From Anolis carolinensis (lineage: Eukaryota), in contig NC_085846.1 of the NCBI RefSeq assembly GCF_035594765.1, forward strand, positions 6,993,190-7,057,189: 64,000 nucleotides of DNA, given 5' to 3'. The position numbers were made by a program, and so were the translations under genes. Shown piece after piece: positions 5,665-37,295 of the stretch. The notes below the pieces were generated by a model. The model ran no database searches, was not told where the DNA came from, and saw only the letters and a program-made list of their open reading frames with translations. Position 1 is the first letter of the stretch. Each line of letters begins with the position of its first letter.

Positions 5665-6790
5665 TATGACACAGCAAACAAGATAGATATGCTGGATTTC
5701 GTATCACAAAATCACAAGTCGAACACTTCCCAAGTGTCTAGGACTGTGTGATGTATTTTCGGATGATGCGCGCAGATCCTATTAGGGTGGCCTTTTGCAG
5801 TTGGCAGATCGTAATTTTGTCAATGTCTATTGTTTCCAAATGCCGGCTGAGATCTTTTGGCACGGCACCCAGTGTGCCCACCACCACCGGGACGACCTGC
5901 ACTGGTTTCTGCCAGAGTCTTTGAAGTTCAACCTTGAGGTCCTGAGTTTTTCCTGTTGTTTTTCGTCAATGCGACTGTCACCTGGGATGGCGACATCAAT
6001 GATCCAAACCTTTTTCTTTTTCACAACTGTGATGTCTGGTGTGTTGTGTTCCAGAACTTTGTCAGTCTGGATTGAGAAGTCCCACAGTATCTTTGCGTGC
6101 TCATTTTCCAATACTTTTGCAGGTTTGTGATCCCACCAGTTCTTTACTGCTAGGAGGTGGGACTTGAGGCATAAGTTCCAATGAATCATTTGGGCCACAT
6201 AGTTGTGCCTCTGTTTGTAGTCAATCTGTGTGATTTTCTTACAGCAGCTGAGGATATGATCAATGGTTTCGTCGTTTCCTTGTCCAGTCTGCATTTTGGG
6301 TCATCAGCTGATTTTTCGATCTTGGCCTTAATTGCATTTGTTGTTGTTGTTGTTGTTATTATTATTTACACAACAAGATTAGTACACAGCAAACAAGATC
6401 ACTATGCTGGCTGTTGTATTCGATCACATGTCGGACATTACCCAAGTGTCTAGAACTACGCAATGTATCGGCGGATAATGCGTGCAGATCAGAGTAGGGT
6501 GGCCTTTTGCAGCTGACAGGTGGTAATTTTGTCAGCGCCGATTGTTTTTAAGTGCTGGCCAAGGTTTTTAAGCACTGTACCCAGTGTGCCCATCACCACT
6601 TTGCCCACCTTGACTGGCTTGTGCCAGAGTCTTTGTAGCTCGATCTTTAAGCAATTGTCATATCGTAAAAGCTTTTCCAGTTGCTTCTCAGCAATTTTGC
6701 AGTCACCTGGGATTGCAACATCAACGATCCATACTTCGTTTTATTCCACGATCGTGAGATCAGGGGTGTTGTGCTCCAAAACTCTGTTAT
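5665..6790 (-). mobile_element. Two 3' fragments of R4/Dong-clade non-LTR retrotransposons (zinc-knuckle end + RLE endonuclease)
   Basis: ETIDHILSCCKK...RHN...WDF.IQTDKVLEHNTPDITVV..KVWIIDVAIPGDSRI is the PD..D RLE motif; frameshifted; flanked by (TTA)n. Confidence 0.8.
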
Positions 6791-7589
6791 TATAATTAAG
6801 CTCTTGAAGCCAAAAGCAACTGGCCACCCCTTTTGCTCCCTACCTTCATTCCCAAATAAGCCCAACAATTGTGCAGGCAAAGGAGACAAAAAAAATTGTT
6901 TACTAGGTGTTTGTTTCCTTGTCGATAGAGATTTTATTTTTGCACAAAACCAGAGGTCCTTCTTCTCCTCCCTCCAGTGTTGCTGTTTGTGTGTGCGTAT
7001 GTGTGTGAATGAATCTCAATGCTGTGCCTGCGTTTGTGTGCCACGTCTGTGAATCCGACTCTGTACCCAAAAATAAAGACACTTTTGTCTTTTTGTTCAA
7101 GTCTTTGGTGCGAAGGGAGAACATGGTGCAAAAGAGGAGCCAGAGATGGATGGGAGTGGGTGGCTTTTCACAGCACACTTCAGCGGCTGGATTGATGAAT
7201 TTGAGGAATGTTTATTTATTTATTTAAAACATTTATATTCTGCCATTCTCACCCCGAAGGGCAAACATTAAATGCTGGAACCTAAAATAAACCATAAATA
7301 CATTATTAGAAGCAGAAGTGGGGTTCCATAGCGCAATCTAAAGGGAGTGGGATAATAAGGGGTAAATGCCAACAGACAATGAGGGTGACATTCGTAGAAT
7401 AGGTGAACGTTTAAGTGTGCTTCTATTAGGGCAGGTACGTGTTAGGTTAATGTGTTTTAGGCCCCTTCTACACTGCCATATAATCCAGATTGCCAAAGCA
7501 GATAATCCACACTATCTGCTTTGAACTGGATTATATGAGTCAATGCTGCCATATAATCCAGTTCAAATCTGGAGCTAGAAGATGGATTA

Positions 7590-12533: not shown

Positions 12534-13223
12534 ATGACTGAAGAGGTTCCAGCCGCGCCGGTAGCCGCGCTCCCAGCCGTCAAGGCCCCCGCGAAGAAGG
12601 CGAAGAAAGCGGCAGGAGGCGCTGCCAAGGCTCGGAAGCCTGCTGGCCCCAGCGTGACGGAGCTGCTGACCCAGGCCGTGTCGGCCTCCAAGGAGCGCGG
12701 CGGGGTCTCCCTAGCCGCCCTCAAGAAGTCCTTGGCGGCCGCCGGTTACGATGTGGAGAAGAACAACAGCCGCATCAAGCTGGGCCTCAAGAGCCTGGTG
12801 ACGAAGGGGACCCTGGTCCAGACCAAAGGCACCGGCGCTTCAGGCTCCTTCAAGCTCAACAAGAAGCAGGCCTCCGAGGGCAAGGAGAAGAAGGCTGCCC
12901 CCAAGAAGAAGCCCGCCTCCGCCGCTTCCAAAGCCAAAAAGCCCGCCGCCAAGAAGCCCGCCAGCGCGGCCAAGAAGGTGAAGAAGGCGGTGGGCGCCGC
13001 GGCCGGGGCCAAGAAGAGCGTCAAGAAGGTGACCAAGAAGGCGGTCTCCGGAGCCAAGAAAGCGGCCGCCAAGAGCCCCAAGAAGCCCAAGGCGGCCGCC
13101 GCCAAAGCCCGGAAGCCGGCCAAGAGCCCCGCCAAGGCCAAGGCGGCCAAGCCCAAAGCCAAGCCCAAGACCCCCAAAGCCAAGGTGGGCAAGGCCAAGA
13201 AGGCGGCGCCCAGGAAGAAGTAA
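12534..13223 (+). CDS. Linker histone H1 (replication-dependent), 229 aa
   Basis: Globular domain [28 protein letters not shown]...[15 protein letters not shown] and Lys/Ala/Pro tail; intronless. Confidence 0.97.
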
Positions 13224-15916: not shown

Positions 15917-16991
<1,075 letters not shown>

Positions 16992-20267: not shown

Positions 20268-20720
<453 letters not shown>

Positions 20721-21073: not shown

Positions 21074-21203
21074 NNNNNNNNNNNNNNNNNNNNNNNNNNN
21101 NNNNNNNNNNNNNNNNNNNNNNNNNNNNNNNNNNNNNNNNNNNNNNNNNNNNNNNNNNNNNNNNNNNNNNNNNNNNNNNNNNNNNNNNNNNNNNNNNNNN
21201 NNN
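21074..21203. other. Assembly gap (130 N)
   Basis: Run of n characters. Confidence 1.
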
Positions 21204-22920: not shown

Positions 22921-23259
<339 letters not shown>

Positions 23260-24791
23260 TTTTCCAGCCCTAATCTCTTCAACAAAACCCCAAAGGCCCT
23301 TTTAAGGGCCACCCACGTTTTCCTCAAAAGAGCTGTGTTAACCCCAGTCTCCATTAATTTAAAAGTTACTATTTTCAATCCAGACAGCATGCCTGCTCCA
23401 ATTTAAGGGTTTTCTATTCCCATTGTTTTATTCATTCAATAGTCAAATGTATTTTTTATTTCACCCTTAAGTATTGCAATTATTATATGTTGCTTTTTTC
23501 CACATTCTAAAGCAGTGACATGTAATTAAGGCAATCTGACCCACTGAAAAAAATTATAACTTGTTTAAATCTGGCCAATTCAGGGTTTTTTGTTTTTGTT
23601 TTTTGGGGTTTTTTTGCATGCAACTTTATGCCCATTGGGTTATTCATCCAATATTTATTTACTACATCTATATCCCGCTCTTCTTTATCCCGAAGGGAAC
23701 TCAGCGGCTTACAAATCAAATGAACATACAATATATTATTAGCATAGCACAATATAAACATTAAATTAGTATATTGTACTATATCATTATATGGAAATAT
23801 TAGTAATATTACATTTAATATATAATATATAATTAATATATTGTATTATTAGTATAATACTGTATTCCAATAGTCAATGTGTTTTATTTAGCCCTTAAAT
23901 ATTATTATTTGCTTTTTTCTTTTGAAAGAGACTCATAATAAAAACAAGCTGACACACTGAAAAAAATTACAACTTGTTTAGATCTGGCCAGTTTAGTTTT
24001 TTTTTTAATTCAAAAACATGGTTACATAGATTACACATTTAGTTTTTTTATGTGCAAATTCTAATTACTACAATACTACAGCTACATACCTACTACAGAT
24101 AACAAAACTTAATACACAGGAGTAAAAGACTTGACAGATTTAAGCTACAAACCTCTTGCTCACTAACTATCCTATTTCCTTTAAATCAGGCATGGGACAA
24201 CTTTGTCTCTCCAGATGTTTTGGATTCCCAACTCCCACCATTCCTAACAGCCTTAGGCTCTTTCCTTTTCCCCCTTAGCATTAGCAATACCTCACAACTT
24301 CTGAAGGATGCCTGCCATAGATGTGGGCAAAATATCAGGAGAGAATGCTTCTGGAACATGGCCAGACAACCCAGAAAACATACAACCCTGTGATCCTGGC
24401 CATGAAAGCCTTCAACAACACATAAGCAATAATAGTCAATGGTTGCAGATCGCCAAGGATTGTGTTAATACTGATTTATTTATAAATAAAAATATAATTT
24501 TAAAATAATTATAAGTATTTTTATAAAATAATTATAACATTTAGGGGTTATAATCCCCCTTTGTCTGATGGATCTGGTAACAAGCAAAAGGTCCCTCCAC
24601 TAACCTGAGAAACATAACAAGAAAGGAGCTTTGCAAGTTTGCAGCATTTGGAACAGATGATGCCTGCAAGCTAATGCAAGCATTAGCAGCCAAAATGCTA
24701 TGTTTGAAACCTCAGGGGCTATATTTATCATGTCAGAAGCAAATTGAAGATACGGTTATAATTTATTTAAAACCACAAACTTTGCATTATA

Positions 24792-26822: not shown

Positions 26823-27278
<456 letters not shown>

Positions 27279-30520: not shown

Positions 30521-31342
30521 CATTCCATAGATATATAAACCCCACTTGCCCAGTTTCCAACAGACCTCACAACCTTTGACGATGCCTTCCATAAATGTGA
30601 GAGAAACATCAGGAGGGAATGCTTCTGGAACATCACCATACAGCCCAGGAAACTCACAACAACACAGTGATTCCGGCTATGAAAGCATTCGCCAACACAA
30701 CAACAACAAAGACAATAAATACGTTTCCCACCTTTAACCCAGGGAAACCCAAGTTATATTATAAAGCAAGACACAGCTTTAAAAACCTCGGGGGATGCCT
30801 CAAACACAAGAATTTTTTCTCCCACCCTGGACATCATTCCATAGATATATAAACCCTACTTGCCCTGTTTCCAAGGGACCTCACAACCTCTGAGGAAGCC
30901 TGCCCTAGATGTGGGCGAAACGTCAGGAGAGAATGCTTCTGGAACATGGCCATAGTGCCTGGGAAACACAGCAACCGGCCATGAAAGCATTCGCCAACAC
31001 ATCAACAACAAGCATAATAAATATATTTCCCACCATTAACCCAGGGAAACTCAAGTTATATTTTAAAGCAAGACACAGTTTAAAAAACCCGATTTTATTG
31101 AAAATGGAAATGAACTTTAAAAAAGGATGCCTGCCATAGATGTGGGCGAAACGTCAGGAGAGAATACTTCTGGAACATGGCCACACAGCCCAAAAGACAT
31201 ACAACAACCCTGTGATCCCGGCCATGAAAGCCTTCGACAACACAGAGTTTGAATTGCAAACACCAATAAAATAAACTTTAAAATAAACACACACAAGGAA
31301 GCACACGATTGCAATGGAGAGACAAAGAGGAAACTATTTCAA

Positions 31343-31493
31343 GGGACTTCCCCTCCTCGCAGACACCGGAAATGGCCGTTTGGTCGCCTTTGCCCTCCAT
31401 TTCCGCCCATTTCCAGCCTCTTATTTGCATAGAGCATCCCTCATTAGCATGGCATCGCTCCCATTGGCTGAGAGGCGCTCTGTGTGGGCGGGG
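31343..31493 (+). promoter_or_regulatory. Putative Pol II promoter of the RT ORF
   Basis: GGGACTTCCC (NF-kB-like) 31343-31352; ACCGGAAAT (ETS-like) 31365-31373; CCGCCC 31403-31408; CTTATTTGCAT octamer (ATTTGCAT 31423-31430); ATTAGCAT 31443-31450; ATTGG 31463-31467; GGGCGGGG 31486-31493. Confidence 0.55.
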
Positions 31494-31619
31494 CCTGTGC
31501 GACTGCTCTGCTAGGCGCCCATGTGTAGTTTCAAAACTTCTTTCTTCCTGTTGCAAAAGAGAAAGAGGGGAGTTTTGGAATCCCTGCCTTGATTTAAATT
31601 GGGATAAATTTGAATTACT

Positions 31620-33953
31620 GTGAAGATCTCTCCTGCTTGGGACCATCTCCCTGGAAGAAGAAGAGAAAGCAAGCCCAATTTTGGGGAAAAGGGCGGCTCA
31701 GCTCCTTGCCTGAGACTTGGCTCCATCCACTTCCTCTCTTTCTTGGGAGGGGATTTCCAAGAGAGAAGGACTGCATTTGCTCAGTGGCTTTCGCTTCGGC
31801 CACCAGCCTTTTCAATGACCTTTCCTGCAGCCGGGGGGAGAAGGCAGTCACCGGGCAAAATCCGCACCCAGCACCCGCCTTTTCCACGGAGCGGAGGAGC
31901 CATGCAGCCCGGCAAAAGCAGCCTCACGCAGTGGCAAAGGATACGCATCAAGGAGATCCAGGAGGCCGCCACTTTCAAAGGGTTCGAGAAGGTGCTCCAA
32001 AAAGTGACCAGGGAACTGTCTGCCGACGACAAAGCGTCCCCTCGGAAGCCCAGGCGCAGGAGGAAGGTTTCCATAACGGCGGACAAGAAGGCCCGCCAGT
32101 TCCAGCACATGTACCGCACCTCCAAACCCAAGGCCTTGCTGACGATCCAGAAAAAGCTCTCCCCGCATTGCAAGATCCCTTTGGAGGAGCTCGAGCGTCA
32201 CTTCACCAGAGTCTTTGCCGCGAGGGATGCCGAGGCGACCCCCCGACGTCCTGATGGCATGCCTCCGTTGCCGAAGATTGGTTCTCCCAAAGCCCTCGAG
32301 CGCCTGAGACGTGACTTCACCCCGAAAGAGGTTGCGGAGAAGCTCCTCAAAGTCCCCAACAAAGTCAACGGGAAGGACAAGATCTCTCGCGAGAAGCTGA
32401 AGCAGCGGGACCCCGGGTGCCACGTCCTGACCGCCGTCTTCAACAGATGCAAGCAGTTCCGCCGCATCCCTGCCGCCTGGAAGGAAGTGCCGGTCATCCT
32501 CAATTTCAAGAGCGGGGAGCCCTCCGACCCGGCCAACTGGCGGCCACTCTTCCTTTGCGACACGCTTTACAAGACGTACGCCCGCTGCCTTGCCCGCCGC
32601 GTCACCGACTGGGCCGTGGCAGGTGGGGCCGTGAGCCCTCAACAGACGGCCTACGTCCCCTTGCGCAAGGGCACCGACGAGCAGCATTTCCTCCTGCAGT
32701 CCACCATCGATGTCGCCCGGCACAAGCGACAAGAGCTAGCCTTGGCCAAACTGGACCTTTGCAATGCTTTCGGCTCCATCCCACACAGACATGTCTTCGA
32801 CATGCTGTCAAGGTTCGGCGTACCGGAAGATTTCCTCGACGTGCTACGCTCGCCCTACGTCGGCCTCTCCATCGTCGTGATGGCGGCCAACAGGAAGACC
32901 CAACCGATACCTATGAAGAGGGGCTTGATGCAAGGGTGTCCTCTGAGTCCTATCGTTTTCAACCTCAGCATAGAACCTTTGATCCGCTACATCGTGGAGG
33001 GACCAGAAGGCTTTGTTCTGTATGACCAGAAGGTCAGCGTTCTCGCTCACGCCGACGATATAGTGTTCATTGCCAGCGATGGGAGAGGACTACAACGCAT
33101 GCTGGACAAGGCCTCTGAAACTGCCGATTGGATAGGCCTAAACTTCAATGCCAAGAAGTGTGAATCCCTTCACATCCGCCAAAGCAAACTGTGCTCCTCA
33201 AGATTCACCCTCCAGGGAAAGTCCATCGGGTCCATCGAAAGGGACCAAGCTTTTGAGTATCTAGGGATGCCTTTGATTTTGCCCAACCAGCCCCTTACGA
33301 TCTTGAAGGAGCCTTTCCGAAAGTTGCTCGGAGAAGCCCAACGTATCAATGTGTCCCCGTTGACTCCTCAGCAGAAGATGGATGCGCTCAAGACCTCTGT
33401 CCTTCGCAAATGTTCCTACCTCCTGAAAAAGTTGCCAGTTGTGTGGAAAGAACTCAAAACCGCTGATTACACGATCACCAACATGATGATGAAATGGTTG
33501 GGTATTTCCGAGGAGGATGAAATACGTCTTTGGATCCCTTGGAAAGATGGCGGCTATGGACTCCTGCCATTGACAGACATGGCCAACGTGGCCACCATCT
33601 CCTACGGCTTCCAGCTGCTGAACTGTTTGGATGACACAGTGAGGAATGTGGCACGTGGTGCCCTTCGCAGCACCGTCCAGAGGAAACTGGGCTGGCACCC
33701 TCGGAAAGAAGAACTGGCCTACTACCTGAATGGAGAGTTTGGCCGTGACAGGGGAGACTTTACCAATCTCTGGTGTCGTGTCAAAACTGCCACGTGGCAC
33801 TCCAGTCAACTCATTTCTTGTACCTGGACGTACCATCAAGGTAGCTTTTGCATGGATGTAGATGACACCCTGTTTTCAGAAGAAGGCAGGAGCCTGGAGA
33901 ATTCTCTGAATAAGGCCTTGTTGAGACCCACGTTGCTTGCCTCACTTTTTTAA
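31620..33953 (+). CDS. Utopia/NeSL-like (R2-group) reverse transcriptase ORF lacking the endonuclease; candidate domesticated RT gene
   Basis: 777 stop-free codons. First ATG 31815; Kozak-like GCCATG at 31902 gives 683 aa. Motifs: RDPGC.VL, NWRPL.LCDTLYK.YA, LDLCNAFGSIPH (D at 32754), QGCPLSPIVFNL, HADD (33048-33059), GLNFNAKKC, FEYLG, thumb/linker GEFGRD. No CCHC or PD..D RLE before the stop. Confidence 0.85.
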   Translation: MKISPAWDHLPGRRRESKPNFGEKGGSAPCLRLGSIHFLSFLGGDFQERRTAFAQWLSLRPPAFSMTFPAAGGRRQSPGKIRTQHPPFPRSGGAMQPGKSSLTQWQRIRIKEIQEAATFKGFEKVLQKVTRELSADDKASPRKPRRRRKVSITADKKARQFQHMYRTSKPKALLTIQKKLSPHCKIPLEELERHFTRVFAARDAEATPRRPDGMPPLPKIGSPKALERLRRDFTPKEVAEKLLKVPNKVNGKDKISREKLKQRDPGCHVLTAVFNRCKQFRRIPAAWKEVPVILNFKSGEPSDPANWRPLFLCDTLYKTYARCLARRVTDWAVAGGAVSPQQTAYVPLRKGTDEQHFLLQSTIDVARHKRQELALAKLDLCNAFGSIPHRHVFDMLSRFGVPEDFLDVLRSPYVGLSIVVMAANRKTQPIPMKRGLMQGCPLSPIVFNLSIEPLIRYIVEGPEGFVLYDQKVSVLAHADDIVFIASDGRGLQRMLDKASETADWIGLNFNAKKCESLHIRQSKLCSSRFTLQGKSIGSIERDQAFEYLGMPLILPNQPLTILKEPFRKLLGEAQRINVSPLTPQQKMDALKTSVLRKCSYLLKKLPVVWKELKTADYTITNMMMKWLGISEEDEIRLWIPWKDGGYGLLPLTDMANVATISYGFQLLNCLDDTVRNVARGALRSTVQRKLGWHPRKEELAYYLNGEFGRDRGDFTNLWCRVKTATWHSSQLISCTWTYHQGSFCMDVDDTLFSEEGRSLENSLNKALLRPTLLASLF

Positions 33954-34053
33954 ATTGTAGTTGGATCCTAAAGATTGTGGAATCACAGTGGCTTTGCCCA
34001 TCCTGATTAAACCTTCATACCTTTTTGCTGCCTACCTCCTCTCCATTCTAGGA

Positions 34054-35007
34054 AAGACAGTTCTGGCCCGGAACCCATCCTGTGCCTTTATGGATACAAT
34101 CCTGGCCTGGAACCTATCCTCTCTCTTTGCAAATAGAGAAGCCATCTTGTGCCTTTGTGGATACAGTCCTCATCTGGAACCCATCCTGTGCCTTTTGCAG
34201 ATACAATCCTGACCTGGACCCACCCTGTATCTTTTGCAGATACAACCCTCATCTGGAACCCATCCTGTACCTTTGCAAATACAATCCTGACCTGGAGCCC
34301 ATCTGGTGCCTTTTGCAGATACAATCCTGACCTGGAACCCATCCTGTACCTTTGCAAATACAATCCTGACCTGGAGCCCATCCAGTGCCTTTTGAAGATA
34401 CAGTCCTGATCTGGAACCCATTCTTTGCCTTTTGCAGATACAGTCCTGATCTGGAACCCATTCTTTGCCTTTTGAAGATACAGTCCTGATCTGGAACCCA
34501 TTATTTGCCTTTTGCAGATACAGTTCTCATCTGGAACCCATCCTGTTCTATTTGCGGATACAATCCTGACCTGGAACCCATCCTGTTCCTTTTGCAGATA
34601 CAGTTCTCATTTGGAACCCATCTTGTGCCTTTTGCAGATACAGTCCTGATCTGGAACCCATTCTCTCTCTTTGCAAATAGAGTCCTAACCTTGAACCCAT
34701 CCTGTGCCTTTGTGGATTCAACCCAGATCTGGAACTCATCCTGTGCTTTTTACAGATATAGTCCTCATCTGGAACCCATCCTGTGCCTTTGTGGATACAA
34801 TCCTGACCTGGAACCCACCCCATGCCTTTTGCAGATACAGTCCTGATCTGGAACCCATTCTTTGCCTTTTTCAGATACAGCCCTGACCTGGAACCCATCC
34901 GGTGCCTTTTGCAGATCAATCCTGACCTGGAACCCACCATGAGTCTTTTGCAGATACAATCCTCATCTGGAACCCATCCTGTGCCTTTTGTAGATACAAT
35001 CCTGACC
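34054..35007. repeat. Minisatellite, about 24 units of 39-40 bp
   Basis: Consensus GATACAATCCTGACCTGGAACCCATCCTGTGCCTTTTGCA; units counted by the GAACCCA anchor from 34071 to 34970. Confidence 0.95.
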
Positions 35008-37295
35008 CTTCGCCGCCCTAAAACCACCTAACGTATTACTTCAATATCCATAAGGGCTGAATCCCTTTTCTCCCCTCTTCCAAAGGATGTCTCCAAAACT
35101 CGGACTAAAAGCCAGAGTGGATTTGCTAGCCTATTGCCACAGAAGACAATCAAGAGAAGGTACTGGGATCCCAACTAAGTTATGGAAGATTATCTTCCAC
35201 AGTATTGTAGCAAATGTTTCTGAGAACTTGGTGGGGCACTTCACTCTGGCGGATGGCCAGAGACTAGGGTCCTGTCTGCACTACCATATAATGCAGTTTG
35301 AAACTGCATTATATGGGTGTGGGGCCTTAGAAGTGGTGACAACAAAATGTAACTTTGCGCTGGATGCTCAGGACAGCTGTCACCCCAATCTCTTTTAAAA
35401 GGGTTGTTTTGTGATGTCTGTCATTAGAAACTGGAAGGGCTAAATTTGTGGTCCTAGATTGTGTTTACACTAGGCATGCATGGGTGAACTTGGGTTCTCC
35501 AGGTGTTTTGGACTCCAACTCCCATCATTCCTAACAGCCTCAGGCCCTTTCCTTTTGCCCCTCAGCCGCTTAAAACACCTGCAGGGCCCGAGTTCACCCA
35601 TGCCTGGTCTATACTGCAGAATTAATACAGTTCGATGCCACTTGAACAGCCATGCCTATACAATATTGGGAGGTGCAGTTTGACAAGACTTCTCTGCCAA
35701 AGGGAGCGATGCCTCCCCAAACTACAACTCCCATAATTCCGCAGCATTGAGCCGTTGGCAGTTAAAGCGGTCCTGAACTGCATTCATTCCGAAGTGTAGA
35801 CACACCCTTTGTCACAAGATGCAGAGACAACAGACAGCTGAGTATATGCCTCTCGTGTCAACCTCACACTGGATAGAACTGAAATATTATATATTTTTGA
35901 AACATATGCATATTTTTCAATTCTGCCTTCTCTTGGGGGTAACTCAGATTTTTGGGGGGAGAAGGGCAAGGGAATTGGGGAGGGGGCATTGTATTTGACT
36001 GCCGTTTGCCTTAATTGATTGTCATCTGAGCCGTTTTTTTAAATAAAATCTTGATGAATAAAACTCTGAGAATGCCTGAACCTATTGCATTTATTCCTGG
36101 GGAGAAAAGGAACTAAAAGTAAGTTAAATTCATCAATGAGCAATGTCATTCTGAATCCATATAGCAGGCATGGGCAAACTTGGGTCCTCCAGGTGTTTTG
36201 GACTCCAACTCCCACAATTCCTAACTTGTTAGGAATTGTGGGAGTTGGAGTCCAAAACACCTGGAGGGCCCAAATTTGCCCATGCCTGCTATATAGCTTT
36301 TGCCATGGGTGCATCCATACTGCCAAATTAATGCAGTTTGATCCCACTTTCACTGCCATGGCTCAATGCTATGCAGCGCTAGGAGTTGTAGTTTTATAAG
36401 GTCTTTCTAGGCGTTGCATTTGCAATCTCTCCCATCTTATTTTCCTCCCTACTAGACTGTGCAAAGTCTGTCCGTTGCCCACACAAAGAAACCTAAACTG
36501 TGCTGAATAAACAGATCTTTTTCGATATGAGTCACCCTGCAACTTCCCTTCTGCTATTCTTTCTGCCACATTTCAGAGAATGTTTGTCAAAAACCGCTGG
36601 AGATGGAGGATGGGCGGCTGGCAAGAAGTGCTTTTGCAGATAGGAAGGACAGGAATGTGCAATTTGTTTACAGATGAATTCTACAATATAGAGCAGGCAT
36701 GGGCCAACTTTGGCCCTCCCTCCAGGTGTTTTGGACTCCAACTCCCACAATTCCTAACAGCCTACCGGCTGTTAGGAATTGTGGGAGTTGGAGTCCAAAA
36801 CACCTGGAGGGAGGGCCAAAGTTGGCCCATGCCAGGTGTAGATTGACTCATAAACTGGATGCAGGATTTACAGTAAAATAGTGCATAGCCCTATCTCTGG
36901 GATTATACTTTGGCTGCTCACACACAGATCCACCCATTCCCCACCTTTCTGCAAAAATCCCTGGGCTGCAATGTGTTTATTTGGAAAAAATTCCAAAACT
37001 GGAAGAGAAATGTTGAAATGCCGGTAAGTCAAGGTCAGTGTCTACTACATTCTTCCTCCAGTCCTGCTCTCTTTATCTTTCAGATAACTGGAAATTCTTT
37101 TGCTCTCACCAATACATTCTGCAGCTGCTGCAAAGTGAGAAACGTTGCAGCACTGGAGAACCCATAACGAAACCACTCTTTGAAACTCACAAATGTTTGC
37201 AGTGTTCAAGTTGTTGTATGATATTTTTGGCAATTGACTGTTTTGTACACATGTTGGAAACCACCCTGAGTCCTCTCAAAGAGATAGGAAATAAA

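What the first reader, a model, noticed from the sequence alone, without database searches (positions are those of the whole stretch)
31620..33953. Candidate domesticated reverse transcriptase: intact, endonuclease-less Utopia/NeSL-type RT ORF beside a histone cluster
Seen: a 777-codon ORF with no stop or frameshift, while every other retroelement in the window is a broken fragment. It contains the RT domains plus thumb/linker, then stops (LENSLNKALLRPTLLASLF*) where R2-group elements continue into the CCHC knuckle and RLE nuclease. No poly(A) tail or TSD is evident, and an ATTAAA lies 53 nt past the stop. Knowledge: motifs such as RDPGC.VL, W...GGA.S, DL.NAFGSIPH and GEFGRD resemble reptile Utopia (NeSL-related, U2-snRNA-targeting) elements as I recall them. 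Retrotransposed copies normally lose the 5' end, not the 3' nuclease. Inference: many substitutions in normally conserved motifs, together with a long open frame and loss of the nuclease, fit a host-maintained RT-only gene better than a young or dead insertion.
Basis: partly seen in the sequence, partly recalled or inferred. Interest (0 to 1): 0.9.

Follow-up and report, generated by a model that had tools for sequence, protein, structure and literature searches.

The report
Host-kept reverse transcriptase gene in lizards
The green anole has a single-copy, transcribed gene that is the polymerase core of an old jumping gene without its DNA-binding and DNA-cutting ends, and the same cut-down gene lies near the histone genes of a distantly related wall lizard, so lizards appear to have kept it for their own use, which has not been described for this kind of enzyme in vertebrates.

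Summary
Window 31620-33953 (+) is an unbroken 777-codon frame in Anolis carolinensis. It encodes an R2/NeSL/Utopia-type reverse transcriptase (RT) with no N-terminal zinc fingers and no C-terminal CCHC knuckle or restriction-like endonuclease (RLE).

- A DNA run shows one copy at 90% likeness or more.
- Three RNA-like runs from three studies each give one unspliced contig. It starts at 31532-31608, just after an octamer/CCAAT/GC-box region that has no RNA cover.
- Podarcis lilfordi has an intact 672-aa protein that is collinear from start to stop (41% identity). It has the same ATG position and nearly the same stop, and it lies 86 kb from an H1/H3/H4/H2B histone cluster. The anole gene lies 4 kb from one.
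- A third RT-only protein, from an unknown organism, joins the two lizard proteins in a clade (support 100/99) that is sister to full-length turtle elements.
- The catalytic residues are kept in all three, and the AlphaFold model (pLDDT 90.6) matches R2 from NTE-1 through the linker.

Neutral decay cannot keep 2 kb open in both lineages. What the gene does is unknown. I infer an endonuclease-independent polymerase that extends 3' ends made by other factors.

The same window's array and promoter notes (s1-558064, s1-558074) came from this scan.

The parts
31343..31531 (+). Promoter-like, non-transcribed upstream region. Motifs: ETS-like CCGGAA at 31366 and TTCCG at 31401, octamer ATTTGCAT at 31423, inverted CCAAT at 31463, GC box at 31486.
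   Evidence: There is no cover at 31290-31489 in three RNA-like runs, while the DNA run covers it. Similarity to lacertid H2B promoters is at motif level only: an 11-mer, E 0.08.
31532..31901 (+). 5' untranslated region. RNA contigs begin at 31532, 31593 and 31608. It holds one in-frame ATG at 31815 in a weak context (this start gives the 712-aa form) and no out-of-frame ATG.
   Evidence: table 8 (records 16, 24 and 32).
31902..33953 (+). Coding sequence of the RT-only protein (683 aa plus stop). The ATG lies 8 codons before the 'TQWQ' motif, as in Podarcis. GC3 is 70%, against about 43% GC in the flanks.
31902..32528 (+). N-terminal extension, matching NTE-1 and NTE0 of R2 (RNA-binding and template-handling parts). 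There is no zinc finger or Myb domain before it.
   Evidence: Structural alignment: model residues 16-677 match R2 9nl2_A 223-875, and model 57-676 match R2Bm 305-868. Domain names follow PMC10499050. The turtle relative P0020 has zinc fingers upstream of this point; the lizard proteins do not.
32529..33272 (+). RT fingers and palm (Pfam RVT_1). Motif A Asp, motif B QG, motif C HADD, motif D Lys and motif E LG are all present.
33273..33881 (+). Thumb and alpha-helical linker. Homology with full-length elements ends here, just before their CCHC knuckle.
33882..33953 (+). Low-confidence C-terminal tail (residues 661-683) and the stop codon. The 'L.K.L' motif lies 9 codons before the stop (11 in Podarcis).
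33954..34194 (+). Transcribed 3' region, a minimum extent. It includes ATTAAA at 34006, which is read through, and the first degenerate units of a 40-bp tandem array (34138-35007). All contigs stop at about 34194, probably because the repeat breaks the assembly. The next AATAAA signals are at 36042 and 36057.

Best explanation
This is a host gene of squamate reptiles derived from a Utopia/NeSL-type (R2-superfamily) non-LTR retrotransposon. An ancestor of iguanian and lacertid lizards fixed a copy cut at both ends. That copy kept the RNA-handling N-terminal extension (NTE-1/NTE0), the RT fingers and palm, the thumb and the linker. It lost the N-terminal zinc-finger DNA-binding part and the C-terminal CCHC knuckle and restriction-like endonuclease.

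In the anole the gene is single-copy. It is transcribed without splicing from a start region at about 31530-31610, behind a flanking promoter with octamer, CCAAT and GC-box motifs, and it most likely makes a 683-aa protein from the ATG at 31902.

Shown: the architecture, the copy number, the transcription, the conservation of the reading frame and catalytic residues in two lizard lineages, and the position near a histone cluster in both.

Inferred: the protein is still a polymerase. Because it cannot bind or nick a target site, it would copy RNA into DNA from 3'-OH ends supplied by something else, such as DNA breaks or ends, or RNA or cDNA ends reached by template jumping as R2 RT does. It would act as a cellular enzyme and not as a transposition machine. 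Which cellular process it serves (repair or chromosome ends, control of retroelements or viruses, or other) is open.
For: Copy number: the genomic run X1 gives depth 10.6-11.5 across the ORF, the same as the unique flank at 31290-31589. No extra contigs were laid at 90% likeness or more.

Transcription: runs X4, X7 and X9, from three studies, each give one contig covering 31532/31593/31608 to beyond 34060. None covers 31290-31489, and none shows a joint. Sixteen RNA-like runs in four studies hold 92% or more of the sampled words. The 370-nt leader has no out-of-frame ATG.

Conservation: Podarcis lilfordi CAI5791446.1 (672 aa, intact, single exon) aligns with 41% identity over residues 9-661 of 672. 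Its ATG is also 8 codons before 'TQWQ', and its stop is 11 codons after the shared 'L.K.L' motif, against 9 in the anole. A third RT-only ORF, P0017, has the same limits to within about 20 codons. All three match the turtle full-length protein P0164 only over its residues about 133-840, and the flanks hold no zinc-finger or RLE remnant.

Position: the Podarcis gene is on OX395138.1 at 48,320,051-48,322,069. That is 86 kb from H1 CAI5791442.1 and its H2B/H4/H3 and tRNA cluster, with three annotated proteins between. The anole gene starts 4.2 kb after an H2A of an H1/H3/H4/H2A cluster, with tRNA-Gly(GCC) genes 6 kb downstream.

Phylogeny: the RT-only clade has support 100/99, Anolis plus Podarcis 96/96, and the clade is sister to turtle elements at 100/99.

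Selection: synonymous sites are saturated (pS 0.61) while pN is 0.38, so omega is at most 0.42. In a substitution-only simulation the frame stays open in 0.2% of replicates at K=0.1 and in none at K=0.25. GC3 is 70-76% against about 44% GC in the flanks, in both lizards. Coding SNPs among individuals split 4 synonymous to 3 non-synonymous.

Fold and active site: pLDDT 90.6 and pTM 0.90. The R2Bm match has Z 36.1 and rmsd 2.7 A over 533 residues, covering R2Bm 305-868. Motif A Asp, the F/Y five residues after it, motif B QG, motif C DD, motif D K and motif E LG are kept in all three proteins.
Against: - Orthologs are known from only two named species plus one run of unknown origin. No other squamate protein of this clade is in the databases searched.
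- Synteny is regional, not gene-for-gene: 86 kb against 4 kb, opposite relative orientation, and no alignable flanking DNA.
- The proteins evolve fast: tips of 0.8-1.1 changes per site, and they are less like turtle elements than many unnamed database relatives (two of them named arthropods) are. Conserved motifs are degraded in Anolis and Podarcis: 'QKGF/EGC.EH', the 'APGPD' motif, and several thumb positions. The polymerase or its RNA binding may therefore be altered.
- dN/dS below 1 is also expected for a living transposon lineage.
- 'RNA' is the tool's guess for the runs. No strand, tissue, poly(A) site, ribosome or peptide evidence is available.
- Paralogs below 90% likeness were not looked for.
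Confidence: 0.6

Rival explanations
1. The gene is domesticated but no longer works as a polymerase. It would act by binding RNA or proteins, for example as a decoy or repressor that sequesters RNAs of related retroelements, or as a scaffold, as Prp8 does with its inert RT-like core.
For: Anolis and Podarcis have lost or changed residues that are conserved at 85% or more across the family (the three-way changes by 85-89%) in the NTE0 'APGPD' motif, the 'QKGF...EGC.EH' segment (partly deleted in Podarcis), the Trp before the motif A Asp, and several thumb positions. Some changes are shared by all three RT-only proteins. Evolution is fast.
Against: The residues needed for catalysis and dNTP binding are kept in all three proteins after very long divergence: motif A Asp, the aromatic five residues later, the K and R of the fingers, motif B QG, motif C DD, and motif D K. 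An inert scaffold would not need them. P0017 keeps the 'QKGF/EGC.EH' motifs. The fold is predicted with very high confidence in an R2-like form.
Confidence: 0.25
2. It is a member of a still-mobile or recently mobile, non-autonomous RT-only retroelement family. Copies landed independently in the anole and the wall lizard and use an endonuclease supplied in trans.
For: RT lineages of transposons also show dN/dS below 1, high GC3 and long branches. Kojima and Jurka list a low-copy Utopia family in Anolis whose ends could not be found.
Against: There is one copy at 90% likeness or more in a genomic run. Both lizard copies lie by a histone cluster; by my own rough estimate, chance for a random site is below 1e-3 if there are a few such clusters in a 1.5-Gb genome. 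There is no poly(A) tail, no U2 snRNA flank, and no full-length partner at either locus. The promoter motifs lie outside the transcribed part, so a retrocopy would not carry them.
Confidence: 0.08
3. It is a dead, doubly truncated Utopia insertion that is drifting neutrally, and its frame is open by chance.
For: It lacks both ends of the element, and some conserved motifs are degraded.
Against: In simulation, substitutions alone close the frame in 99.8% of replicates at 0.1 changes per site, and indels would add to this. Yet the frame is open in two lizards whose synonymous sites are saturated. The start and stop positions are shared, the catalytic residues are kept, and GC3 is far above the flank composition. 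The locus is transcribed.
Confidence: 0.03

Closest known systems
Utopia (NeSL-related) U2-snRNA-targeting non-LTR retrotransposons of reptiles, including Repbase Utopia-1_ACar (formerly NeSL-1_ACar) and the turtle Utopia families (Kojima and Jurka 2015, PMC4640811)
   Same: The RT sequence lineage is the same. The nearest full-length relatives are turtle proteins with a CCHC knuckle and RLE (P0164 Natator, P0069 Chelonia, P0020 Gopherus). They are 37-44% identical and form the sister clade. The paper lists Utopia in Anolis as low-copy, with ends not found.
   Different: This gene has no N-terminal zinc fingers, no CCHC knuckle, no RLE and no U2 flank. It is single-copy, has a flanking promoter, and sits in a conserved position with an intact frame in a distant lizard. 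It therefore behaves as a gene, not as an element. I could not check whether the Repbase consensus was built from this locus.
R2 retrotransposon protein (R2Bm 8gh6; vertebrate R2 9nl2, 9nl3, 9dou)
   Same: The fold is the same from NTE-1 through NTE0, RT, thumb and linker: Z 34-40, rmsd 2.7-4.0 A over 533-592 residues. The catalytic motifs are the same.
   Different: It lacks the N-ZnF and Myb domains that read the target, and the CCHC ZnF and RLE that open and nick it (PMC10499050). It therefore cannot carry out target-primed reverse transcription on its own. Sequence identity is about 20%.
rvt genes: single-copy domesticated RT-like genes of fungi, rotifers, some plants and bacteria (Gladyshev and Arkhipova; summarised in PMC10680173)
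   Same: The idea is the same: a single-copy RT-related host gene under purifying selection, with the catalytic residues kept.
   Different: The RT lineage is different and is not LINE-derived, and rvt genes are not reported from vertebrates. rvt proteins carry out non-templated polymerisation. I did not test relatedness to rvt here.
Telomerase TERT, and endonuclease-deficient retroelements that use free DNA ends (Penelope-like Athena; endonuclease-independent LINE-1 insertion)
   Same: Each is a reverse transcriptase without its own nuclease that extends existing DNA 3' ends. This is the working model proposed here, from my own knowledge.
   Different: No telomeric repeat, template RNA or end association was seen here. 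The structural match to TERT is much weaker than to R2.
Bacterial domesticated group II intron-like RTs (G2L4 in double-strand-break repair; defence RTs DRT2 and DRT9)
   Same: These are RT cores cut free from their mobile element and reused by the host. They appear as lower structural matches, Z 18-21.
   Different: They are prokaryotic and lack the NTE-1 and linker. The homology is remote.

Membership tests
Utopia/NeSL-type RLE non-LTR retrotransposon (as a mobile element) | The RT groups with Utopia/NeSL-lineage elements. | tested here: met
   It is sister to full-length turtle elements carrying CCHC and RLE, with support 100/99. The turtles and Anolis are listed as Utopia hosts.
Utopia/NeSL-type RLE non-LTR retrotransposon (as a mobile element) | One to three N-terminal zinc fingers. 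| tested here: not met
   Homology starts at the ATG. The turtle zinc-finger part has no match in any frame of the window or of the Podarcis locus plus or minus 10 kb.
Utopia/NeSL-type RLE non-LTR retrotransposon (as a mobile element) | C-terminal CCHC zinc finger and restriction-like endonuclease. | tested here: not met
   The protein ends before the 'KPDQGK' and CCHC part. No remnant lies downstream.
Utopia/NeSL-type RLE non-LTR retrotransposon (as a mobile element) | Insertion in or next to a U2 snRNA gene or U2-like site. | tested here: not met
   The Rfam gathering scan of the window finds no U2, only tRNAs and histone stem-loops.
Utopia/NeSL-type RLE non-LTR retrotransposon (as a mobile element) | Repeated copies in the genome. 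| tested here: not met
   One copy at 90% likeness or more in genomic run X1. Older paralogs below 90% were not searched.
R2-superfamily reverse transcriptase fold | NTE-1, NTE0, fingers and palm, thumb and linker in an R2-like arrangement. | tested here: met
   AlphaFold model with pLDDT 90.6. VIA-align Z 36.1 and rmsd 2.7 A over 533 residues to R2Bm 305-868.
R2-superfamily reverse transcriptase fold | Catalytic Asp of motif A and the two Asp of motif C. | tested here: met
   D285 and D385/D386 (683-aa numbering) are kept in Anolis, Podarcis and P0017.
Domesticated (host-maintained) transposon-derived gene | Single copy in the genome. | tested here: met
   (Anolis only; threshold 90% likeness).
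Domesticated (host-maintained) transposon-derived gene | Ortholog at the corresponding chromosomal position in distant species. | tested here: met
   The Podarcis gene is 86 kb from the H1/H2B/H3/H4 and tRNA cluster. The Anolis gene is 4 kb from an H1/H3/H4/H2A cluster with tRNA-Gly nearby. This is regional synteny only. The orientation differs, and only two species were compared.
Domesticated (host-maintained) transposon-derived gene | Reading frame intact over a time in which neutral DNA decays. | tested here: met
   Frames of 683 and 672 codons are open while synonymous sites are saturated. Simulation.
Domesticated (host-maintained) transposon-derived gene | dN/dS well below 1 among orthologs. 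| tested here: inconclusive
   NG86 omega is 0.42 to 0.67, an upper bound because dS is saturated. No close species pairs were available. The value does not separate a gene from a living element.
Domesticated (host-maintained) transposon-derived gene | Expression from a host promoter. | tested here: met
   RNA-like contigs in three studies start after the octamer/CCAAT/GC-box region, which is itself uncovered. The runs' RNA status is the tool's guess, supported by this silent stretch.
Domesticated (host-maintained) transposon-derived gene | The protein is made and has a function. | not testable with these tools
   No Ribo-seq, proteomic or genetic data were within reach.
rvt-type domesticated RT genes | Membership in the rvt RT clade. 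| not tested
   All of the top sequence hits I looked up, and the top structural hits, are LINE or R2 type. No rvt sequence was compared.

The most novel reading that the evidence does not exclude
Squamates carry an ancient domesticated LINE reverse transcriptase, older than the Iguania-Lacertoidea split (on the order of 150-200 million years by published time trees). It would be an endonuclease-less Utopia/R2-type RT embedded in the major histone/tRNA gene region that is still catalytically active and serves a cellular role. That role could be RNA-templated synthesis at DNA ends or breaks, or cDNA-based control of retroelements or viruses. Apart from telomerase, it would be the first host RT gene of retrotransposon origin known in vertebrates.
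Probability: 0.45. Interest if true: 0.9.

Novelty: new variant of a known kind. Interest (0 to 1): 0.8.

Why it matters
Host genes built from transposon gag, envelope, transposase or integrase parts are well known in vertebrates. To my knowledge, a retained retrotransposon polymerase is not, apart from telomerase, and two literature searches here found no report.

A conserved, expressed, nuclease-free R2-type RT would give a natural test of what a cell can do with reverse transcription that is uncoupled from integration. It would show which parts of an R2-type protein are enough for a cellular role, and R2 proteins are now being engineered for gene insertion.

It also corrects how this sequence is filed. 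It is currently recorded as a low-copy Utopia/NeSL repeat and as an uncharacterised 'RT domain-containing protein'.

The model is testable in anoles, where I understand genome editing and embryo work are established.

Tried and rejected
- Remnants of the missing domains: tblastn with nine full-length relatives found no zinc-finger, CCHC or RLE piece of this family in the window or at the Podarcis locus. The only RLE-like hits (5.9-6.8 kb, minus strand) belong to a different, more distant element.
- Splicing at the GT at 33832: no joint appears in any run.
- Flank homology between Anolis and Podarcis: nothing beyond common lizard repeats.
- H2B-promoter origin of the upstream region: only an 11-nt octamer-centred match (E 0.08), and no H2B coding remnant. 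This stays a motif-level resemblance.
- U2 snRNA or a histone stem-loop after the ORF: none.
- The 40-bp array as part of a conserved system: it is absent at the Podarcis locus.
- More orthologs: the word-index search with the three-protein alignment found none and did not even return two of its own query sequences, so it is weak evidence. The exhaustive representative search shows no further clade member among the best 150.
- Organism of run SRR13336341 (P0017): not found in the paper library.
- The H1 search did not list Podarcis lilfordi among its best 120. The cluster look-up of the Podarcis muralis H1 gave the P. lilfordi accession instead.
- dN/dS: synonymous sites are saturated, so only an upper bound could be given.
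- The N run at 21074-21203 was left as it is.
Full report
**Observation.** The window comes from Anolis carolinensis. The ORF translation from the ATG at 31815 is UniProt A0A803TJC4, 'Reverse transcriptase domain-containing protein', apart from 2 residues. The frame at 31620-33953 (+) is open for 777 codons and is the longest ORF in the window by far. It carries Pfam RVT_1 at 9e-29. Its best matches among solved structures are R2 retrotransposon proteins at 2e-41, aligned to R2 residues 271-810 of 1121. The window also holds a replication-dependent histone cluster: H1 at 12534-13223 (+), H3 at 15917-16363 (-), H4 at 16656-16991 (+), H2A at 20268-20657 (-), a second H4 at about 22946-23292 (+), and H2A at 26838-27278 (+). 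Five histone 3' stem-loops are present.

**Limits of the coding region.** In alignments with full-length relatives, homology begins a few residues after the ATG at 31902. It ends about 20-35 codons before the stop, just ahead of the relatives' 'KPDQGK' motif, CCHC knuckle and PD-(D/E)xK nuclease. The turtle relative P0020 carries zinc fingers upstream of the point where the lizard protein starts. tblastn with nine full-length proteins found no trace of these missing parts in any frame of the window. The AlphaFold model built on 52 homologs is very confident: mean pLDDT 90.6 and pTM 0.90, with only residues 661-683 disordered. It superposes on R2Bm residues 305-868 (Z 36.1, rmsd 2.7 A over 533 residues) and on vertebrate R2 proteins (Z 34-40). 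In the R2Bm nomenclature this span covers NTE-1, NTE0, RT, thumb and linker. The N-ZnF and Myb domains, the CCHC ZnF (R922/R924) and the RLE (D996, D1009, K1026) lie outside it (PMC10499050).

**Copy number and transcription in the anole.**
- Twenty public runs in seven studies hold the ORF. Sixteen of them are small, RNA-like contig sets from four studies.
- I laid four runs on 31090-34060. The genomic run X1 covers everything. Its depth is 10.6-11.5 on the ORF, equal to the unique flank at 31290-31589, and no additional contigs appear at 90% likeness or more. The neighbouring repeat at 31090-31290 reaches depths in the millions. The ORF is therefore single-copy at that threshold.
- Each of the three RNA-like runs, from three studies, yields one contig. 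The contigs start at 31532, 31593 or 31608 and run 134 nt past 34060 to about 34194.
- None of the three covers 31290-31489, and none shows a joint.
- The uncovered stretch serves as a silent control. It shows these runs are not genomic DNA.
- The uncovered stretch holds an octamer at 31423, an inverted CCAAT at 31463, a GC box at 31486 and ETS-like sites.
- The leader between 31532 and 31901 has no out-of-frame ATG.
- The ATTAAA at 34006 is read through. The contigs all stop inside a 40-bp tandem array, which probably breaks the assembly. AATAAA signals follow at 36042 and 36057.

**Relatives.** An exhaustive HMMER search of 1.84 billion representatives gave three relevant groups of hits:
- Podarcis lilfordi CAI5791446.1 (P0014), 672 aa, 43% identity. 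This is the best non-self hit.
- Full-length or partial turtle proteins (Natator, Chelonia, Gopherus) at 39-47% identity.
- A 663-aa ORF (P0017) on a 2.3-kb Logan contig of run SRR13336341, organism unknown.

The Podarcis protein is a single open exon and is collinear with the anole protein from end to end. Both have their ATG exactly 8 codons before a shared 'TQWQ' motif, and both stop 9-11 codons after a shared 'L.K.L' motif. P0017 has the same limits within about 20 codons. All three match the turtle protein P0164 only over its residues about 133-840. The Podarcis flanks (10 kb each side) also lack zinc-finger and RLE remnants.

In maximum-likelihood trees the three RT-only proteins form a clade with support 100/99. 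Anolis plus Podarcis has 96/96. The clade is sister to the turtle elements at 100/99. Their branches are long, so attraction between long branches cannot be fully excluded. The shared truncation points and shared derived residues (V342L and others) support the same grouping independently.

**Synteny.** Flanking DNA does not align between the two lizards, which is expected at this distance. Position does agree.
- A cluster look-up of a Podarcis H1 returned P. lilfordi H1 CAI5791442.1. It is on the same 53.85-Mb chromosome and only four accession numbers before the RT protein.
- Its locus, OX395138.1 at 48,233,303-48,233,905, holds H2B, H4, H2B, H3 and H1, eight tRNA genes including tRNA-Gly(GCC), and a PDZ-domain gene.
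- The RT gene is at 48,320,051-48,322,069, which is 86 kb away.
- In the anole the RT gene starts 4.2 kb after an H2A of the cluster, and two tRNA-Gly(GCC) genes lie 6 kb downstream.
- By my own rough estimate, with a few such clusters in a genome of about 1.5 Gb, a random site falls this close with a probability below 1e-3.
- The relative orientation differs, and three annotated genes intervene in Podarcis. This is regional synteny, not gene-for-gene synteny.

**Selection.**
- Between Anolis and Podarcis the synonymous sites are saturated (pS 0.61) while pN is 0.38. Omega is therefore at most about 0.42.
- Substitutions alone close the anole frame in 99.8% of simulated replicates at 0.1 changes per site, and in all replicates at 0.25. 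Indels would add to this.
- GC3 is 70-76% in all three genes, against about 44% GC in the flanks. CpG observed/expected is 0.6-0.76.
- Among four individuals plus the reference, the coding SNPs split 4 synonymous to 3 non-synonymous. That is too few to test.
- Of about 96 columns conserved at 85% or more in 49 relatives within the covered region, Anolis keeps about 82%, Podarcis about 74% and P0017 about 79%. The other relatives in the alignment keep 86-100% of the 116 columns of the wider set (one keeps 79%).
- Every catalytic or nucleotide-binding position is kept in all three proteins: motif A Asp and the aromatic residue five positions later, the finger Lys and Arg, motif B QG, motif C DD, motif D Lys and motif E LG.
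- The losses are in the NTE0 'APGPD' motif, the 'QKGF...EGC.EH' segment (degenerate in Anolis, partly deleted in Podarcis, intact in P0017), the Trp before motif A, and several thumb positions.
- The lizard proteins are less similar to turtle elements (37-41%) than many other database relatives are (43-47%; two are named arthropods, the rest unnamed). The rate therefore rose after the truncation.

**Interpretation.** A copy truncated at both ends cannot transpose by itself. The same truncated form, with the same start and nearly the same stop, lies near the histone cluster in an iguanian and a lacertid. It is open in both and single-copy and transcribed in the anole. The simplest account is one ancestral fixation followed by maintenance by the host. 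I put that at about 0.85.

The split of Iguania and Lacertoidea is on the order of 150-200 million years in published time trees. That figure is from my own knowledge and was not tested here.

Conservation of the active site makes a working polymerase the more likely mechanism, about 0.6-0.7 given domestication. Without DNA-binding fingers, CCHC knuckle or nuclease, the enzyme must use 3' ends made by something else. R2 RT is known for template jumping and for extending unrelated 3' ends (my knowledge). That makes end- or break-primed cDNA synthesis a reasonable model, but nothing here shows it. An inert RNA-binding or repressor role is the main rival, at 0.25. A mobile RT-only family (0.08) and neutral decay (0.03) are poorly supported.

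**Known or new.** Repbase holds Utopia-1_ACar (formerly NeSL-1_ACar). Kojima and Jurka (2015) list Utopia in Anolis as low-copy with undetected ends. UniProt and ENA hold the two lizard proteins as uncharacterised predictions. Two full-text searches found no paper describing a domesticated Utopia, NeSL or R2-type RT gene in squamates or other vertebrates. The closest concepts are the rvt genes, telomerase, and bacterial domesticated RTs. I class the finding as a new variant of a known kind, the domesticated reverse transcriptases.

**Limits.**
- There are two named species and one unknown.
- The RNA status of the runs is inferred.
- No strand, tissue, translation or activity data are available.
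- Paralogs below 90% likeness were not searched.

Noticed in passing
window 34138-35007 (degenerate units from about 34070): A 40-bp tandem array of 22 copies at about 80% match starts about 120-185 nt after the RT stop. The RNA contigs run into its first units and all end at about 34194.
   Followed up: partly
window 31343-31500: The octamer, inverted CCAAT and GC box lie upstream of the RNA start. The octamer with its flanks matches lacertid H2B promoters over 11 nt only (E 0.08). The rest does not align, and there is no H2B coding remnant.
   Followed up: partly
window 40116-40189 (-) and 40324-40394 (+); L003 and L004: Two tRNA-Gly(GCC) genes lie in inverted orientation 6 kb after the RT gene. 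The Lacerta and Podarcis histone loci carry 7-8 tRNA genes, including Gly-GCC, within 3 kb of H1. This histone-tRNA linkage resembles that of the mammalian major histone cluster.
   Followed up: partly
window 5830-6800 (-): A fragment encodes a CCHC-like motif and an RLE-like domain of a different, more distant RLE-type LINE (best hit to P0009, E 3e-13). It is not the missing end of the RT gene.
   Followed up: partly
window 31090-31290 (and the 314-bp repeat at 30521-31089): This is a very high-copy dispersed repeat. Summed contig depth is in the millions in the DNA run and in the tens of thousands in the RNA-like runs. It ends about 240 nt before the RT transcript start.
   Followed up: no
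window 32892: The window has A (Arg) where all four runs and the older assembly's protein have G (Gly). This is a private allele of the sequenced animal or an assembly error.
   Followed up: partly
window 22946-23335 and 21074-21203: A second H4 gene with its stem-loop lies at 23290-23335. A 130-N gap lies between it and the H2A at 20268-20657.
   Followed up: no
proteins P0069, P0014, P0020: Public names look wrong. The Chelonia mydas 'renalase isoform X1' (545 aa) is 81% identical to the turtle element P0164 over essentially its whole length. UniRef calls the Podarcis and Gopherus proteins 'ribonuclease H', although Pfam finds only RVT_1 in them.
   Followed up: partly
I did not verify it.
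   Followed up: no
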